Below, one piece after another: positions 9,231-49,018 of a DNA stretch of 64,000 nt. Source of the DNA: Octopus sinensis (taxonomy: Eukaryota); assembly GCF_006345805.1 (NCBI RefSeq), contig NC_043014.1, positions 32,736,001-32,800,000 of the forward strand, in the 5' to 3' direction. Position 1 is the stretch's first letter, and every line of letters begins with the position of its first letter. A model generated the notes under the pieces. That model saw only the letters and a program-made list of their open reading frames with translations, made no database searches and had not been told where the DNA came from. The position numbers were made by a program, and so were the translations under genes.

Positions 9231-9652
9231 ATGAGCTTCCAGTTGGTGTGTTTACATCCCCATAACTTAGCAGTTCAGTAAAAGTTCCCGAAATAATAAG
9301 TACTAGGCTTTAAAAAAATAAATCTTGAGGACAATTTGTTCGACTAAAACCCTTTAAGTATATATATATATATATATATATAATATTTAAAAATTGAGGG
9401 AGATAAATTAATATTAATTTTAATATCAATTTAAAACCAGTAGTCCAGCATTCAAAAAATCTGAGGAGTCAGAGAAAATTCAAATATATGTGTATATTGG
9501 CAGGGCTGGCTTGCTAGGTAGCCGGCCAGAATGCTAGAAATAGATCATAAACGATCAAACTACAAGGGAAATTCTCTAGAGGAAGAATTCAGCGAACACC
9601 AGAACCAAATTTGGCGGGCAGGACATATGAAAATTAAATAAAAACAGACTTA

Positions 9653-9728
9653 AATGCATACCTCGGTTTCGGTCTTAACAAAAGAATTACTTGCATAATT
9701 CAAGTGTCCGTGACTTCTTCAGTACATT
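9653..9728 (-). ncRNA. Type I hammerhead ribozyme motif
   Basis: Minus: AAUGUA-CUGAAGA-A-GUC...GAC-C-GAAA-CC-GA-GG-U-A-UGCAUU. Stem I 6 bp (one G.U), short stem III with GA loop, GUA triplet, predicted cut between 9659 and 9658. Confidence 0.85.
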
Positions 9729-10194
9729 CGGTCCTCGAGATGCAAACCGCAAGACTAACCCCAGCTCTCTGTGTCAAGACAGACACGTGCTTAGTCTTAC
9801 TGATTACATCGGGAATAAAATTTCAATGTCTTGGTTCCGGCGCGCTAAGAGACTCCTGAAGCGAAGGGCTGCAGTGAATAATTCACTGCGGGTAAAGCTT
9901 ACTACTAGGGAACATATTTATTTAAATATTTAAAAATTGAGGGAGATAAATTAATATTAATTTTAATATCAATTTAAAACCAGTAGTCCAGCATTCAAAA
10001 AATCTGAGGAGTCAGAGAAAATTCAAATATATGTGTATATTGGCAGGGCTGGCTGCTAGGTAGCCGGCCAGAATGCTAGAAATAGATCATAAACGATCAA
10101 ACTACAAGGGAAATTCTCTAGAGGAAGAATTCAGCGAACACCAGAACCAAATTTGGCGGGCAGGACATATGAAAATTAAATAAAAACAGACTTA

Positions 10195-10269
10195 AATGCA
10201 TACCTCGGTTTCGGTCTTAACAAAAGAATTACTTGCATAATTCAAGTGTCCGTGACTTCTCAGTACATT
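10195..10269 (-). ncRNA. Second-unit hammerhead motif with a 1-nt deletion in the core (CUGAGA)
   Basis: Plus text gacttctcagtac versus gacttcttcagtac in unit 1; otherwise identical. Confidence 0.65.
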
Positions 10270-11261
10270 CGGTCCTCGAGATGCAAACCGCAAGACTAAC
10301 CCCAGCTCTCTGTGTCAAGACAGACACGTGCTTAGTCTTACTGATTACATCGGGAATAAAATTTCAAATGTCTTGGTTCCGGCGCGCTAAGAGACTCCTG
10401 AAGCGAAGGGCTGCAGTGAATAATTCACTGCGGGTAAAGCTTACTACTAGGGAACGTATTTATTTAAATATTTAAAAATTGAGGGAGATAAATTAATATT
10501 AATTTTAATATCAATTTAAAACCAGTAGTCCAGCATTCAAAAAATCTGAGGAGTCAGAGAAAATTCAAATATATGTGTATATTGGCAGGGCTGGCCTGCT
10601 AGGTAGCCGGCCAGAATGCTAGAAATAGATCATAAACGATATCAATGGATTAAATATGAGTTAGCTCATCCTTAGCAACCTATATGTTTTTGAAACAGCC
10701 ATAAGACTTTATACATAGACTTTATTCATGTCCCAGACTCCTTATGAATCATTTTACATCCGCTTTATCATCCCCTTCATTCGGACTTCGCAAGTATGTT
10801 TATGGACTTACACCTTTTATATATTTATATATATGAATTTTTATGTGTTTATAGATTTTTATATGTGTATGAATTTTTATGTATTTATAAATTTTCGTGT
10901 ATACGTATGTAGTTATAAATTCTCAGAAATTTTTATATATCATATAAATGAATGCATCTATGTATGTACCTTTTATACTATGGAGAATTTCGTTAATGTG
11001 GATTGAATGAATATATACATCGGCCTTTGAATCTGTTTTTTCCTCTCCTTAATTTTATATATGTATCTATCTATCTATCTATATATATATATATATATAT
11101 ATATAGGTGAGAAAGTTGGTGTGTGAAAGCACGTGGTTGAATATATAGAAAATAGTAAAAAGTGAAAAAACTACAGAAGGCTTGTTTTAAAAGGTTAAAA
11201 AATATATTTAAGTCATTATGTCAGAAGAATGTTATAAAATTTTTTCATACAGTGACATGGT

Positions 11262-11309
11262 TTTTGAAGAAATTACCGGTTTCGTGTTAACTTTTCAAAT
11301 TTCTCAAAA
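11262..11309 (-). ncRNA. Minimal type I hammerhead motif with U3:A8 core variant, in PLE 3' UTR
   Basis: Minus: UUUUGAGAAAU-UUGAAAA-GU-UAAC-AC-GAAA-CCGG-U-A-AUUUCUUCAAAA; long stem I, 2-bp stem II, palindromic ACCGGU stem III, GUA triplet. Confidence 0.75.
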
Positions 11310-11418
11310 CATCATGTTATGTCTTCGTTATGAAGTGTAAAGAAGAGTTCCAGGTAAGGGGAGGTAATAAGTGATTTCTTCCGGGAGATAATCGCTTTAT
11401 ATTTCTTGCCCATTTTAA

Positions 11419-46094: not shown

Positions 46095-46625
46095 TATTGT
46101 TGATGTTGTTGTGGCTCTTGTTGCTTCTGTTGTGACAGTTTGTTGTTATTATTGCAATTTGTTGTACATGTTGTTGCCAATGTTGTTGTTAATGGTGGTG
46201 GTAGTGGGGTGGGTGGGTGTAAGTAGATGGTCTGGTGGAAGGCATTGCTAAAGGTGGTGGTGGTGGTCGTTGTCGTGGTCGTCGTTGCCGTCACCATCGT
46301 TGTCATGGTCGTGGTCATGGTCGTCATGGTCGTCGTGGTCGTGGTAGTGTGGTGGTGGTGGTGGTGGTGGTGGCAGTGGTGGTTGTGGTCGTCGTCGTGA
46401 CTGGAATGGGTGATGTTGCAGATGCTGCCAATATTAGTTTCCATTGCCCACTTTCATTGATCATTATCTTCCTACATCGTCACATTCATTATTATCATCA
46501 TCGTAGGCATCATCATTTTCATCATCATCATCATCACCATCACCACCATCTTCATCATCATCCTCACCACCATCACTGTCACCACCGTCATAGTCATTAT
46601 CATCCCTATAATTCTCATCATAATC
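46095..46625. repeat. Compound trinucleotide array (GTT/GGT/GTC/CAT)
   Basis: Direct reading. Confidence 0.95.
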
Positions 46626-47150
46626 ACAGAAGTCATCATTTTCTTCCACAGACTCTTGTGTGTCTTATAACTAACAATAGGATAAGGTCAAAAGATATAC
46701 AAGGATATAGATAGATAGATAAATAGACCTTTTTCCTTCCGGTCTTTCAAAATGTGACCTCATGTGTACCGTTGGCGATTTTTTTCCTCTGTCTTCCCTT
46801 CTCTGGATCTTCCCTTCTCCTATGTTTCCAACGAAGAGCTCCTTCTTTCCTTCATTCCTGAGCGTCCAATAATACTATATTTGTTCCACGTCCTCGTGTT
46901 GTTGTGTTTTTTTGTGCTTTCTTGTTTGGATTAACTATATATATATATATATATATATATCTATATACTAAGCAATAAGGGTTTAGCAACGAGTTGCCTT
47001 ACCACATACCGAATTTAGAAATAGCAGCCAAAGGGTTATAGCTATTTCTTCTACTAAAAAGGGAGATCTCAGTAAAAACAGCATTTGGAAGGCACAAACA
47101 GGTAAGAGAGAATGAATTGACTGCAATCTATCATACATTTTTTTAGTTAT

Positions 47151-47261
47151 CCACGGACGACGTTTCGAAATCAAGTTTTAAGGAAAGCATACGAATTAAA
47201 TATTAAATATTAAATAATAAATAATTCTATCTTACCGAAACTTCTTTTCTCTTCAGCGTAG
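47151..47261 (-). ncRNA. Type I hammerhead motif with long stem II (left arm)
   Basis: Reverse complement of 47816-47926, with stem III reading GAAACGUCGUC (one base shorter). Confidence 0.8.
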
Positions 47262-47815
47262 AATACTATAATCATAAATGATTATATATTGAATTTTGAG
47301 ATACCAGAAGGCACCAACTCCACTCAGTATCAGTGCGAGCTAGAACCCGCAACTGGTATCACCGAATTCAATTTGTGAATGAAACGATTGTGTCAACAGC
47401 CCCTTCCCACCCGCGTGTAGCCAAAACAAGATGCTGTGGTCATCTACTGAGATAAAATATGGTTATCCGTAATAATGAAGGGTGAAATTAATTAATTTGG
47501 AAAAATTATCAATTACACCAAGTAGTCTTCGGCATGTAAAAGCCTCATTCGAGGAAAATTTAAGTAATACTAAGCAATAAGGGTTTAGCAACGAGTTGCC
47601 TTACCACATACCGAATTTAGAAATAGCAGCCAAAGGGTTATAGCATCTTGTTTTGGCTACACGCGGGTGGGAAGGGGCTGTTGACACAATCGTTTCATTC
47701 ACAAATTGAATTCGGTGATACCAGTTGCGGGTTCTAGCTCGCACTGATACTGAGTGGAGTTGGTGCCTTCTGGTATCTCAAAATTCAATATATAATCATT
47801 TATGATTATAGTATT

Positions 47816-47926
47816 CTACGCTGAAGAGAAAAGAAGTTTCGGTAAGATAGAATTATTTATTATTTAATATTTAATATTTAATTCGTATGCTTCCTTAAAA
47901 CTTGATTTCGAAACGTACGTCCGTGG
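47816..47926 (+). ncRNA. Type I hammerhead motif, canonical core, 82-nt stem-loop II
   Basis: CUACG-CUGAAGA-GAAA(AG)AAGUUU...AAACUU(GA)UUUC-GAAA-CG-UA-CG-U-C-CGUGG; G10.1-C11.1 pair, palindromic ACGUACGU stem III, GUC triplet, cut after 47921. Confidence 0.9.
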
Positions 47927-49018
47927 ATAACTAAAAAAATGTATGATAGATTGCAGTCAATTCATTCTCTCTTACCTGTTTGTGCCTTCCAAATGCTGTG
48001 TTTTTACTGAGATCTCCCTTTTTAGTAGAAGAAATAGCTATAACCTTGGCTGCTATTTCAATTCGGTATGTGGTAAGGCAACTCGTTGCTAAACCCTTAT
48101 TGCTTAGTATTACTTAAATTTTCCTCGAATGAGGCTTTTACATGCCGAAGACTACTTGGTGTAATTGATAATTTTTCCAAATAATTAATTTCACCCTTCA
48201 TTATTACGTATTATATATTATATATAGATATATATTATATATATATATATATATATATAGAGAGAGAGAGAGAGAGAGAGAGATTTATACACACACATAT
48301 ATATACATATATAAATCATCATCATCATCATCGTTTAACGTCCGCTGTCCATGCTAGCATGGGTTAGACGGTTCAACTGGGGTCTAGGAAGCCAGAAGGC
48401 TGCACCAGGCCCAGTCTGATCTGGCAGTGTTTCTACAGCTGGATGCCCTTACACATATACATATATATACATAATATATATACATATATATATATATATG
48501 CAAATACATATGCTGTGAGTTTAAGTATGTGTGTGTATTTATGTGTGTGAGAGAAAGGAGTTCAGTATTTCATTTCTTAACATCCAAAGAGTTATTTAAT
48601 TATGAATGAACAAGTAATAGTCGAAAGTGATAAATGAGAAACTACTATTACTGTTACTACTACAACTACTACTACTATCACTGTTGCTACTACTACAACT
48701 CCTAGAAATAATAATAATAATAATATAATAATAATAATAATCAATTCTTTTTTATTGGCCACAAGGGCTGACACGCATGATTACATAAAGGGACAAGACA
48801 GGACGAAAGGTTACAAAGGGTTTTGCCGTTTTTTTAAAAACATCGAGTAAAAATCTTTATAACAACTTATAAAATTCAACAATGAAAAACTCCCAAAAGG
48901 GGGAGACGTTTCGAAAGGTTCCTGGTGGAAAAAACCCTACAAAAGCCAACGGGAGCCTGGTCTAAAAAGGGGGTGTAGAGAGTCCCCTTTTTTCTCCTTT
49001 TGTATTACCTTTTTGAAA

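What the first reader, a model, noticed from the sequence alone, without database searches (positions are those of the whole stretch)
9382..48208. A hammerhead-ribozyme ecosystem: at least six distinct HHR contexts around one Penelope lineage
Seen: HHR folds at 9653, 10195, 11262, 12811, 24348, 37861, 44441, 47151 and 47816, in six different sequence backgrounds. Most have very short or palindromic stem III, several have (TA)n flanks, and four loci show a 5'-to-5' inverted arm. Established: PLEs carry minimal type I HHRs that can cleave as dimers, often have inverted or tandem partial terminal repeats, and favour AT-rich microsatellites. Inference: a PLE RT/GIY-YIG enzyme mobilises several non-coding HHR RNAs in trans (tandem units, permuted units, a tRNA SINE). 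That would be a PLE-parasite network I cannot match to a described cephalopod system.
Basis: partly seen in the sequence, partly recalled or inferred. Interest (0 to 1): 0.9.

Follow-up and report, generated by a model that had tools for sequence, protein, structure and literature searches.

The report
Hammerhead-bearing Penelope-type repeats in a mollusc genome
This 39-kb stretch holds one broken Penelope-like retrotransposon and five non-coding repeat families that carry hammerhead-ribozyme motifs and share Penelope's insertion signature; this kind of element is already known from other animals, and here it is shown in what is probably an octopus genome.

Summary
All nine motifs exist at the stated coordinates, but they are not equally good. 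Four pass a canonical minimal type I hammerhead descriptor: 9652-9729(-), 44438-44489(-), 47151-47261(-) and 47816-47926(+). Shuffled sequence gives 0.07 hits per window. Site 10194 has a 1-nt core deletion. Site 37853 is a decayed copy of a family whose consensus is canonical. Sites 11267 and 12815 carry the U3-A8 core variant already described for Penelope-like elements (PLEs). Site 24345 has C at core position 9. Rfam's thresholds detect none of them.

The six contexts are six real genome-wide families. B is an autonomous PLE encoding RT and GIY-YIG. A (543-bp units) and F (603-bp units) are tandem, retrozyme-like elements. E is about 290 nt, with a tRNA-like head and about 18,700 copies. 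D is about 155 nt and C about 0.9 kb.

All six share PLE insertion hallmarks. These are a fixed 3' end with an optional extra tail, variable 5' truncation, head-to-head inverted arms with the tail on one arm only, and mostly (TA)n targets. Mobilisation in trans by PLE enzymes is therefore well supported by inference.

That B is the partner is not supported, and neither is catalysis. This is a new member of a known kind: non-LTR retrozymes and Sm-alpha-like SINEs.

The parts
9360..9382 (.). (TA)n microsatellite abutting the 3' end of the family A array; presumed target
   Evidence: Read directly.
9383..10641 (-). Family A array of 2.3 tandem units of 542-543 bp. It is non-coding, GC 0.39. The 3' end is the long form (q445, with the ~113-nt tail). 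The 5' end is truncated at 10641.
   Evidence: (D16 spacing 543/542).
9652..9729 (-). Family A hammerhead with a canonical core: GAAUGUA-CUGAAGA-(A.C mismatch + GUC..long hairpin..GAC)-GAAA-CCGAGG-U-A|UGCAUUU
   Evidence: Descriptor hits. The identical sequence is found in 57 of 105 genome copies, with the variant at N7. The homodimer folds as a double hammerhead.
10194..10270 (-). The same family A motif with a 1-nt deletion in the core (CUGAGA); presumably inactive
11106..12451 (-). Family B: a 5'-truncated Penelope-like element. Coding remnants at ~11422-12455 match RT-thumb/linker/GIY-YIG aa 198-542 and carry a frameshift. The 3' UTR follows, then the 40-nt optional tail at 11106-11145, which abuts (TA)n.
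   Evidence: The full ORF with RVT_1 and GIY-YIG is seen in L102.
11267..11305 (-). Family B hammerhead variant in the pseudo-LTR: GAGAAAU-UUGAAAA-GU(UAAC)AC-GAAA-CCGG-U-A|AUUUCUU (U3-A8 core)
   Evidence: The U3-A8 variant is described in PMC4209133.
12452..12974 (+). Family B: the inverted, more heavily 5'-truncated second arm (GIY-YIG aa 461-542 plus 3' UTR). It has no tail and ends in (TA)n.
   Evidence: (I1, 98%).
12815..12853 (+). Second copy of the family B U3-A8 hammerhead variant
23931..24068 (-). Family C: inverted, heavily 5'-truncated arm consisting of the 3' end plus the ~45-nt optional tail. (TA)n lies to its left.
24141..24511 (+). Family C: a 5'-truncated copy of a ~0.9-kb non-coding element. 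It ends without a tail in (TA)n. An (AAT)n run at 24069-24140 separates the two arms.
24345..24389 (+). Family C hammerhead-like motif with a non-canonical core: CUGAUG-C-(G)-GUCACA GGAG UGUGAC-GAAA-GAAC-U-C|UGGCC
   Evidence: C at position 9 in 19 of 21 copies. It does not fold as a hammerhead dimer.
37853..37989 (+). Family D: a ~155-nt element that is essentially a hammerhead plus ~58 nt. The window copy is decayed: helix I has G>A, and helix III reads ACAGAUGU where the consensus is the palindrome ACAGCUGU.
44346..44631 (-). Family E: SINE-like element made of a tRNA-like head (5'-truncated in this copy), an (AAY)n run, a hammerhead, and the 3' end including the tail. A ~20-nt inverted stub lies at 44632-44650.
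44438..44489 (-). Family E minimal hammerhead: CAACACAC-CUGAAGA-A(bulge)-GGCUG..CAGCC-GAAA-CG-U-U|GUGUU
   Evidence: The 35-mer occurs 18,677 times in the genome, with 0 for the control pattern.
46965..47641 (-). Family F: 1.1 tandem units (unit 603 bp). The 3' end is the short form (q469) and abuts (TA)n.
47151..47261 (-). Family F hammerhead: CUACG-CUGAAGA-(~83-nt helix II)-GAAA-CGUCG-U-C|CGUGG
47642..48209 (+). Family F: inverted arm of one unit. The 3' end is the long form (q568, ~98 nt further) and abuts TA-rich repeat.
   Evidence: (I2 99%, I4 97%).
47816..47926 (+). Family F hammerhead with palindromic helix III ACGUACGU
   Evidence: (RF00163, 16.8 bits), and (double-hammerhead dimer, ddG -12.4 kcal/mol).

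Best explanation
The interval is a (TA)n-rich stretch that has collected insertions of six retroelement families using the Penelope-like (PLE) integration pathway.

Family B is a 5'-truncated autonomous PLE (RT plus GIY-YIG endonuclease). The other five families are non-coding:
- A has 543-bp tandem units.
- F has 603-bp tandem units.
- E is a ~290-nt SINE-like element with a tRNA-like head.
- D is a ~155-nt element.
- C is a ~0.9-kb element.

Each carries a type I minimal hammerhead, or a variant of one, 55-190 nt upstream of its 3' end.

Inferred mechanism. The elements are transcribed: A, F, C and D from unknown promoters, and E probably by RNA polymerase III from its box A and box B head. 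A PLE RT-EN supplied in trans nicks (TA)n-type targets and starts reverse transcription at one of two internal sites near the RNA 3' end. This would give the short end and the long, tailed end. Copying is often incomplete, which gives the variable 5' ends. Template switching would produce the head-to-head inverted arm and the partial tandems.

The hammerheads of A, D and F can pair through helix III with a second copy to form a double hammerhead. In multimeric transcripts this would cut out unit-length RNA, as proposed for retrozymes, possibly followed by circularisation.

Shown here: family membership, copy numbers, end structures, target sequence, motif anatomy and predicted dimer folds. Inferred: mobilisation in trans by PLE enzymes, the identity of the partner, transcription and self-cleavage.
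For: 1. Real families.
- A: at least 1,354 first-look candidates, 94-99% identity, arrays of 1.3-8 units.
- F: at least 1,119 candidates, arrays with a 603-bp period.
- E: at least 4,454 candidates, and 18,677 whole-genome matches to its hammerhead 35-mer against 0 for the control.
- C: at least 2,007 candidates, 93-96% identity.
- D: at least 561 candidates, 80-87% identity.
- B 3' region: at least 1,284 candidates.

2. B is an autonomous PLE. It has RVT_1 and GIY-YIG in a 542-aa frame, genome copies with stop-free frames of 800-1,161 aa, and homologues with RT, DUF8422, GIY-YIG and HTH_animal domains.

3. The PLE signature is present in every family.
- Optional tails: B 40 nt, C ~48 nt, E ~38 nt, D, A q332 versus q445, F q469/478 versus q568.
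- In head-to-head pairs only one arm carries the tail (window copies of B, C and F).
- The 5' start points are variable.
- (TA)n or (TC)n(TA)n lies at the ends.
[quoted passage not shown] It describes the inverted 5'-truncated arm and (TA)n bias as PLE hallmarks (PMC8557442).

4. The non-coding families are not terminal repeats of B.
- No PLE ORF lies within 1.5 kb of 29 A loci.
- Two C loci share only ~0.9 kb.
- A, C, D, E and F give no blastx hit to 121 PLE proteins.
- The longest stop-free frames are 84 aa (A) and 66 aa (F).

5. Each complex is one event. Identity within an array, including between inverted arms, is 0.980 against 0.966 between loci.

6. The hammerheads.
- Descriptor enrichment is 4 hits against 0.07 expected.
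- Where copies vary in A and E, the variation falls on the free position N7.
- A, D and F fold as double hammerheads.
- In the B motif, helix II covaries U-A with C-G across subfamilies, H17 is A, C or U but never G, and the motif is conserved within a variable UTR.
- A 74%-identical PLE from elsewhere has the canonical C3...G8 core at the homologous site with a fully different helix I.
Against: - No motif reaches Rfam's Hammerhead_1 cut-off.
- The core is non-canonical in B (U3-A8) and C (C9). One A copy and the window's D copy are mutated.
- For E and C the predicted lowest-energy dimer is not a hammerhead.
- Within E, the hammerhead is no better conserved than the rest of the element, so the copies themselves show no selection.
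- The 5' ends of A and F arrays do not coincide with the predicted cleavage site, so processing by the ribozyme is not visible in the insertions.
- Published work finds that PLE hammerheads cleave poorly in vitro (PMC4209133), that only 1 of 9 Xenopus retrozyme dimers cleaved, and that hammerhead mutants do not affect PLE insertion in vitro.
- No autonomous partner with a matching 3' end was found for A, D, E or F.
- The tails of A and F (~100-113 nt) are longer than the 30-40 nt described for PLEs.
- E does not sit in (TA)n.
- Candidate counts from the genome search are unverified lower bounds.
Confidence: 0.7

Rival explanations
1. The hammerhead-like motifs are inherited passengers or relics. 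They descend from PLE pseudo-LTR sequence but no longer self-cleave, or need not. They persist because the region is part of what the PLE enzyme recognises near its priming sites, or simply because the families are young. The elements are still PLE-mobilised, so this rival overlaps with the best explanation and differs from it only on catalysis.
For: - Family C spread to at least 2,007 candidate copies at 93-96% identity with C at core position 9.
- B carries U3-A8 in all 26 + 10 copies examined.
- E's hammerhead is no more conserved than its flanks.
- A and F array 5' ends do not map to the cleavage site.
- Hammerhead mutants do not affect PLE insertion in vitro, and no RNA-seq reads end at the cleavage site (PMC11167929).
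- PLE hammerheads show low in vitro activity (PMC4209133).
- In every family the motif sits at a similar short distance (55-190 nt) upstream of the 3' end.
Against: - The core is canonical in the consensus of A, D, E and F, and their variation falls on N7.
- Across related PLE lineages, positions 3/8 and helices I and II change in a compensating way and H17 is never G. That is what selection for the hammerhead fold predicts.
- A, D and F fold into double hammerheads.
Confidence: 0.35
2. The non-coding families are not independent parasites. They are solo pseudo-LTRs or internally deleted copies of autonomous PLEs, produced as by-products of 5' truncation.
For: - PLE insertions are heavily 5'-truncated, and most minimal hammerheads in other genomes occur as single motifs 'probably related to truncated PLEs' (PMC4209133).
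- D is only ~155 nt.
- In vertebrates, pseudo-LTRs and retrozymes are related phylogenetically.
Against: - No sequence similarity to B outside microsatellites.
- No PLE coding similarity in any of the five families.
- No ORF within 1.5 kb of 29 A loci.
- A and F form arrays of up to 8 complete non-coding units.
- E has its own tRNA-like head and a defined 5' end.
- C has a defined ~0.9-kb body.
- D copies share the same 5' boundary.
Confidence: 0.1
3. Family E, and perhaps D, is an ordinary tRNA-derived SINE mobilised by a LINE such as the one at 49019-52455. Its hammerhead would be incidental.
For: - E has box A and box B motifs at tRNA-like positions and no TTTT run inside the element.
- tRNA-derived SINEs are known in octopus (Ohshima and Okada 1994, cited).
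- A LINE with APE, RVT_1 and zf-RVT lies in the window.
- E is not inserted in (TA)n.
Against: - E has no poly(A) or simple-repeat 3' tail, and no target-site duplication is visible.
- About half of the scored E loci have an adjacent head-to-head inverted arm.
- One arm lacks the last ~38 nt, which is the optional tail.
- The hammerhead has the PLE-typical 5' bulge in helix II and a palindromic ACGU helix III.
Confidence: 0.06
4. A and F are satellite DNAs amplified by unequal crossing-over or replication slippage, not by retrotransposition.
For: They form head-to-tail arrays of 543-bp and 603-bp units that are AT-rich.
Against: - More than a thousand dispersed short arrays lie on all large contigs.
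- The 3' ends are fixed, falling at two alternative positions, while the 5' start points vary.
- (TA)n lies at the 3' end.
- Head-to-head inverted arms are as similar to each other as neighbouring units are.
Confidence: 0.04

Closest known systems
Non-LTR retrozymes of metazoans (Cervera and de la Pena 2020, PMC7229834; Li, Clavereau and Pollet 2026 preprint 10.64898/2026.07.22.740005)
   Same: Families A and F match on these points:
- dispersed short tandem arrays of non-coding units a few hundred bp long;
- low GC (0.35-0.39);
- one type I hammerhead per unit with a short or palindromic helix III that suits dimeric action;
- co-occurrence with PLEs, and proposed mobilisation by them.
   Different: - Units of 543 and 603 bp are at or beyond the upper end of the reported 150-450 bp.
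- Helix II is very long (45 nt in A, ~83 nt in F). These are not the 'canonical' type I motifs with loop-loop contacts.
- Rfam does not detect them.
- circRNA expression is untested.
- The direct PLE insertion signature shown here (optional tail on one arm, inverted arm, (TA)n) is not part of the published definition.
- No cephalopod example was found in the searchable literature.
Minimal hammerheads in the pseudo-LTRs of Penelope-like elements (Cervera and de la Pena 2014, PMC4209133; Lunse, Weinberg and Breaker 2017; Craig et al. 2021, PMC8557442; Frangieh et al. 2024, PMC11167929)
   Same: - Family B is an RT/GIY-YIG element with a hammerhead motif in its terminal repeat region.
- It has the U3-A8 core covariant already reported for the S. 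mansoni Cercyon PLE.
- Helix III is palindromic (ACCGGU).
- It has an inverted 5'-truncated arm and a 40-nt optional tail, and it inserts into (TA)n.
[quoted passage not shown]
   Different: - In the B lineage helix II is only 2 bp.
- The whole lineage in this genome uses U3-A8, whereas a 74%-identical relative uses C3-G8.
- The tails of A and F are about three times longer than the 30-40 nt described.
Sm-alpha / Sj-alpha SINE-like hammerhead retroposons of schistosomes (Ferbeyre 1998; Laha 2000; reviewed in PMC6765202)
   Same: Family E is a short, non-coding, very abundant element with an apparent RNA polymerase III promoter followed by a hammerhead.
   Different: - E has a tRNA-like head, an internal (AAY)n run and a PLE-type minimal hammerhead (helix III ACGU).
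- E occurs mostly as single or head-to-head copies rather than tandem repeats, so a cis dimer is usually unavailable.
- Polymerase III transcription and cleavage are untested.
tRNA-derived SINEs of octopus (Ohshima and Okada 1994; I know this paper only from its citation and from memory, and could not read it)
   Same: A tRNA-related head in an abundant short interspersed repeat of an octopus-like genome.
   Different: Identity with the OR1, OR2 or OK families could not be checked. Neither a hammerhead nor PLE-type ends are, to my knowledge, part of their description.

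Membership tests
Hammerhead ribozyme, type I (minimal, PLE-type) | Conserved core CUGANGA ... GAAA | tested here: inconclusive
   Met at 9652 (A), 44438 (E), 47151 and 47816 (F), at 37853 (D), and in the D, E and A family consensus sequences.
Not met at 10194 (1-nt deletion), at 24345 (C at position 9 in 19 of 21 copies), or at 11267 and 12815 (U3 and A8, a documented covariant).
Hammerhead ribozyme, type I (minimal, PLE-type) | Three helices around the core, with a UH cleavage site and an open helix I | tested here: met
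   The descriptor gives 4 hits against 0.07 expected by chance. The D consensus also fits. B fits with a 2-bp helix II (variant core). C fits only weakly.
Hammerhead ribozyme, type I (minimal, PLE-type) | Score at or above Rfam RF00163 gathering threshold (34 bits) | tested here: not met
   There are no hits in the window. The best of the nine sites scores 16.8 bits. There is no hit on 10 family E loci. Other hammerheads in the same genome do pass, at up to 48.2 bits.
Hammerhead ribozyme, type I (minimal, PLE-type) | Compensatory change in helices or core between related sequences | tested here: met
   Tested for the B lineage only. Helix II pair 10.2-11.2 changes between U-A and C-G, and H17 is A, C or U. 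A 74%-identical PLE has C3...G8 and an entirely different but still paired helix I at the homologous site. Copies within A and E are too similar, or decaying neutrally, to test.
Hammerhead ribozyme, type I (minimal, PLE-type) | Site-specific self-cleavage | not testable with these tools
   This needs in vitro transcription of monomeric and dimeric constructs.
Penelope-like element (autonomous) | [quoted passage not shown] | tested here: met
   The window copy matches aa 198-542 at ~92% identity with one frameshift. L102 gives RVT_1 at 9e-8 and GIY-YIG at 0.005. Homologues carry PF00078, PF28514, PF01541 and PF26215. Some genome copies have stop-free frames of 800-1,161 aa.
Penelope-like element (autonomous) | Pseudo-LTR or partial tandem, an inverted 5'-truncated upstream copy, and an optional 30-40-nt tail at one end | tested here: met
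   The inverted arms are 98% identical. Direct repeats 3.5 kb apart are seen in L102. The 40-nt tail is on the minus arm only in the window, and on one arm only in L105 and L106.
Penelope-like element (autonomous) | Insertion bias for microsatellites, (TA)n | tested here: met
   Almost all of the 36 B-lineage 3' ends examined abut (TA)n or (TC)n(TA)n.
Non-LTR retrozyme | Dispersed tandem repeats of short non-coding units, each with a type I hammerhead, at low GC | tested here: met
   Met for A and F. C, D and E are not tandem, so they do not meet this feature.
Non-LTR retrozyme | Expression as self-processed linear and circular RNAs | not testable with these tools
   No transcriptome data are available here.
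tRNA-derived SINE | tRNA-related 5' head with internal polymerase III boxes A and B | tested here: inconclusive
   The consensus head has TGGCGTAGTGG at positions 8-18 and GAGTTCGATTCC at about 51-62. Neither ARAGORN at default settings nor Rfam's tRNA model calls it. ARAGORN at a relaxed threshold gives a poor cloverleaf with anticodon ACT.
tRNA-derived SINE | LINE-type 3' end (poly(A) or a LINE-derived tail) and target-site duplications | tested here: not met
   The 3' end is ...CTCATCTCTTAAATATAGAAC(TGTA). No A-run and no duplication are seen in 9 full-length copies. The ends are PLE-type, with an optional tail and an inverted arm.

The most novel reading that the evidence does not exclude
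Two linked ideas remain open.

1. The hammerhead module may be retained in many unrelated non-coding families because, together with the 55-190 nt that follow it, it forms the portable 3' 'handle' that PLE RT-EN recognises and primes from at two sites. On this reading it is not retained mainly because it cuts RNA.

2. Family E would then be a polymerase III-driven SINE that depends on a PLE rather than a LINE, with about 19,000 copies. If that is general, part of the large 'unclassified SINE' fraction reported for octopus genomes (11.6% of O. vulgaris, PMC13282606) would be PLE-dependent hammerhead elements.

The differing tails (A and F shared; B with possibly C; D; E) would then mark several separate PLE-parasite partnerships.
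Probability: 0.3. Interest if true: 0.6.

Novelty: new member of a known kind. Interest (0 to 1): 0.4.

Why it matters
The field already proposes that animal hammerhead repeats (retrozymes) are parasites of Penelope-like elements. The published evidence is mainly co-occurrence and pseudo-LTR phylogeny.

Here five unrelated non-coding hammerhead families carry the PLE-specific end signature. That signature comprises two alternative 3' ends, the tail on only one arm of head-to-head pairs, and microsatellite targets. It is direct genomic evidence for mobilisation in trans, and it comes from a phylum and lineage where this has not been described.

The data also give concrete substrates for the existing in vitro PLE assay: six 3' modules whose predicted RT start sites can be read off the genome. 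They offer a natural series of core variants (C3-G8, U3-A8, C9) for asking whether cleavage matters for spread. They also suggest that octopus SINE annotation may hide PLE-dependent elements.

This remains incremental. The kind of system, the U3-A8 variant, dimeric action and a SINE-plus-hammerhead precedent are all published.

Tried and rejected
- **Rfam scans.** The gathering scan found nothing. The E-value scan of 9-49 kb was swamped by microsatellite-driven false miRNA hits. A scan of nine small loci gave one weak Hammerhead_1 hit.
- **First strict descriptor.** It required helix II of 70 nt or less and allowed no bulge. It found only 9722(-) and was replaced by the PLE-type descriptor.
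- **tRNA tests of E's head.** ARAGORN on the window, Rfam on the window copy and on 10 other copies were all negative. ARAGORN succeeded only at a relaxed threshold.
- **Covariation within families.** Copies of A are nearly identical. E decays uniformly along the element. I did not run a formal pair count because neutral decay of transposon copies cannot test a structure. I used comparison between PLE lineages instead.
- **Search for the autonomous partner.** All-against-all BLAST of the six families found only microsatellites. Tail-to-tail local alignment with shuffles gave A-F significant, B-C marginal and the rest nothing. A protein search of the genome listed only the B lineage among the 80 matches shown. 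Two external PLE contigs match B only. The partner of A, F, D and E remains unknown.
- **Cleavage site as 5' end.** I tested whether hammerhead cleavage defines the 5' ends of A and F arrays. The start points are scattered, so I rejected this.
- **Family D.** The first search hit only two unrelated flanking repeats. A targeted 148-nt query was needed.
- **Taxon.** It could not be confirmed by name. The genome is 2.72 Gb in 13,516 contigs, and the named PLE relatives are molluscan. From memory, these assembly statistics resemble an Octopus sinensis assembly.
- **Tool limit.** Later copies were fetched by coordinates.

Full report
**Setting**

The window is contig C18:32,736,001-32,800,000 of a 2.72-Gb assembly with 13,516 contigs. 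It is AT-rich, with GC mostly 0.25-0.45, and full of (TA)n and (TG)n microsatellites. These produce only spurious miRNA matches in a permissive Rfam scan. The taxon could not be named with the tools. The PLE protein's named relatives are molluscan.

Curated models do not see them. Rfam at gathering thresholds gives no hit in the window. The best Hammerhead_1 score on the nine sites is 16.8 bits against a cut-off of 34.

A descriptor written for PLE-type minimal type I hammerheads finds four sites: 9722(-), 44481(-), 47256(-) and 47821(+). It requires CUGANGA, a helix II of at least 3 bp with an optional 5' bulge, GAAA, a 4-10-nt A15.1...U16.1 segment, H17 other than G, and a helix I of at least 4 bp. 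The mean over 100 Markov shuffles was 0.07, and no shuffle reached 2.

The remaining five sites deviate:
- 10194 has a 1-nt deletion in the core.
- 11267 and 12815 read UUGAAAA.
- 24345 has C at core position 9.
- 37853 has an intact core but damaged helices I and III.

The motifs are really enriched, but they are of unequal quality.

**2. What the six contexts are**

Each context was used to query the whole genome, and copies were fetched and aligned.

*Family A (9383-10641, minus strand).*
- It has 542-543-bp units and at least 1,354 first-look candidates.
- It forms dispersed arrays of 1.3-8 units at 94-99% identity.
- It is non-coding, with a longest frame of 84 aa and GC 0.39.
- Arrays have variable 5' starts and end at one of two fixed positions, q332 or q445.
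- Many loci are head-to-head pairs in which one arm ends at q332 and the other at q445.
- The hammerhead is identical in 57 of 105 copies. The commonest variant changes only N7.

*Family F (46965-48209).*
- The unit is 603 bp, with at least 1,119 candidates and arrays of at least 8 units.
- The 3' ends lie at q469/478, directly on (TA)n, in six of seven ends examined.
- The window's plus arm ends 98 nt further on, at q568.
- The window holds a minus array and a plus unit joined head to head at 47641/47642.

*Family E (44346-44631, minus strand).*
- It is about 290 nt, at 78-93% identity.
- Its hammerhead 35-mer occurs 18,677 times in the genome, against 0 for the control pattern.
- The consensus has four parts. 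First comes a head with box A (TGGCGTAGTGG at position 8) and box B (GAGTTCGATTCC at about position 51). An (AAY)n run follows, then the hammerhead CUGA[U/A/C]GA-A-GGCUG...CAGCC-GAAA-CGU-U, and finally a 3' end ...TAGAAC.
- The head is not recognised by ARAGORN at default settings or by Rfam's tRNA model. It is 'tRNA-like', not a demonstrated tRNA derivative.
- About half of the scored loci have an adjacent inverted arm, and one arm typically lacks the last ~38 nt.
- No poly(A) tail or target-site duplication is visible.

*Family D (37853-37989).*
- It has at least 561 candidates at 80-87% identity and is about 155 nt long.
- The consensus is canonical: CUGAUGA, a helix II of about 20 bp, GAAA, the palindrome ACAGCUGU, and A at H17.
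- The window copy is decayed.
- Some copies have an extension and inverted arms.

*Family C (23931-24511).*
- It has at least 2,007 candidates at 93-96% identity.
- It is a ~0.9-kb non-coding element.
- Its motif has C at position 9 in 19 of 21 copies and a non-palindromic helix III.
- A ~48-nt optional tail is present in 9 of 20 other copies.
- In the window the tail is on the left inverted arm only.

*Family B (11106-12974).*
- It consists of two inverted 3' parts of a Penelope-like element.
- The minus arm encodes aa 198-542 of the RT-EN protein, with a frameshift. The plus arm encodes aa 461-542.
- A genomic copy has RVT_1 and GIY-YIG in one frame. Others have stop-free frames of 800-1,161 aa.
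- The 3' end ...TACTATTTTCTA lies in (TA)n or (TC)n(TA)n.
- A 40-nt tail, TATATTCAACCACGTGCTTTCACACACCAACTTTCTCACC, is optional. In inverted pairs it sits on one arm only.

**3. The B-lineage motif**

All 36 B-lineage copies examined read AGAAAU-UUGAAAA-G[U/C]..[A/G]C-GAAA-CCGG-U-H.
- Across subfamilies with 82-100% protein identity, the motif blocks are invariant within an otherwise variable UTR.
- The helix II pair 10.2-11.2 switches between U-A and C-G.
- H17 is A, C or U, never G.
- A 74%-identical PLE on an unrelated metagenomic scaffold has, at the homologous place, CGCUAA-CUGACGA-...-GAAA-CCGG-U-U-UUAGCG. That is a canonical C3...G8 core with a completely different but still complementary helix I.

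B therefore carries a true hammerhead homologue with the U3-A8 core covariant. That variant was already reported for a schistosome PLE (PMC4209133). [quoted passage not shown]

**4. Mechanism**

The literature gives the following as PLE hallmarks:
- partial tandems or pseudo-LTRs;
- an inverted 5'-truncated copy upstream;
- a 30-40-bp extension present at only one end;
- a microsatellite, (TA)n, target bias (PMC8557442).

Biochemistry shows that the optional tail is the interval between two internal start sites of reverse transcription. [quoted passage not shown]

All six families show this set of features, including the five without any PLE coding sequence. Units and inverted arms within a locus are more alike (0.980) than units from different loci (0.966). 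This fits the origin of each complex in one event. I therefore infer that A, C, D, E and F are copied and inserted by PLE RT-EN supplied in trans.

Thermodynamic folding of homodimers gives exactly the double-hammerhead architecture for A, the D consensus and F. That architecture has an intermolecular helix I, an intramolecular helix II, an intermolecular extended helix III and an unpaired core. The free-energy changes relative to two monomers are -6.8, -8.9 and -12.4 kcal/mol. The fit is only partial for B and absent for C and E.

Cleavage of multimeric transcripts, as proposed for retrozymes (PMC7229834), is thus plausible for A and F but unproven. Two points argue against a necessary role:
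- A and F array 5' ends do not coincide with the cleavage site.
- Family C spread with a non-canonical core.

Published assays add that hammerhead mutants do not impair PLE insertion in vitro.

**5. 'One Penelope lineage'?**

The families share no sequence apart from microsatellites. There are two exceptions. The tails of A and F are similar over ~75 nt, with 0 of 200 shuffles reaching the score. The tails of B and C resemble each other only marginally, at p about 0.04.

B is therefore not shown to be the driver of A, D, E or F. The genome gave 31,524 first-look candidates for the RT-EN query. O. vulgaris is reported to have 30 recently active Penelope families (PMC13282606). Several partnerships are more likely than one.

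**6. Comparison with what is known, and novelty**

- A and F fit the published definition of non-LTR retrozymes, except that expression is untested. They have unusually long units and a long helix II.
- B fits PLEs with minimal hammerheads.
- E works like the schistosome Sm-alpha/Sj-alpha SINE-like hammerhead elements (PMC6765202), but with PLE-type ends.
- I found no report of hammerhead elements in cephalopods.

The finding is a new member of a known kind. What it adds is that the PLE-specific end signature is visible in several unrelated non-coding hammerhead families side by side.

**7. Verdict**

It overstates three things: the number of good hammerheads, the role of the single PLE in the window, and the novelty.

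My confidence that these are PLE-mobilised non-autonomous hammerhead-bearing families is about 0.7. Whether the ribozymes cleave is open.

Noticed in passing
window 49019-54608 (minus strand): A LINE-type non-LTR retrotransposon lies just outside the finding. Frames carry Exo_endo_phos (51499-52455), RVT_1 plus zf-RVT (49019-50680) and further upstream ORFs, in a GC-rich block (GC up to 0.56). It is not a PLE.
   Followed up: partly
window 12990-13031 (+) and 46895-46936 (-): A 42-nt block, AGTTAATCCAAACAA[A/G]AAAGCACAAAAAAA(A)CACAACAACA, follows the (TA)n run just beyond the 3' end of both B(+) and F(-), in the same relative orientation. Its first 30 nt occur 8,619 times in the genome, with 0 for the control. 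It is probably the 3' end of yet another (TA)n-targeting family lying tail-to-tail on the opposite strand.
   Followed up: partly
loci L001-L030 (genome-wide RF00163 hits; none in the window): Most Rfam-detectable hammerheads of this genome belong to a seventh family: GUAC-CUGAAGA-GACCCAGAACAGGUC-GAAA-CAUGUGU-[U/C]-GUAC, scoring up to 48 bits. No PLE ORF lies within 1.5 kb. Only 74 of 265,664 first-look candidates were scored, so its size is unknown.
   Followed up: partly
L162 (metagenomic scaffold, PLE 58% identical to B), about 240 nt after the ORF: By hand reading, the motif at the homologous position is CCA-AUGAAUA-U-CAC..GUG-AAA-CCGG-U-U-GG. That would be an A3-U8 pair. Related PLE lineages may thus show C-G, U-A and A-U at core positions 3/8. 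This was not tested further.
   Followed up: no
window 28306, 31618, 36928, 39563, 48318 (family D17) and 9244, 14971, 34205, 43445, 44768 (family D18): There are several copies of other short interspersed repeats, for example ...TTTAACGTCCGTTTTCCATGCTAGCATGGGTTGGACGG..., which is preceded by (ATC)n. They were not examined for hammerheads or end structure.
   Followed up: no
window 37578-37665: An 88-nt near-perfect palindrome (82% self-complementary) lies just upstream of the repeat that flanks family D. It is unrelated to the hammerhead.
   Followed up: no
window 16800-19200, 23800-27200, 35200-35900: Long (TA)n, (TG)n and (TATG)n tracts give dozens of sub-threshold matches to miRNA families such as mir-297, mir-3149 and mir-466. 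These are low-complexity artefacts.
   Followed up: yes
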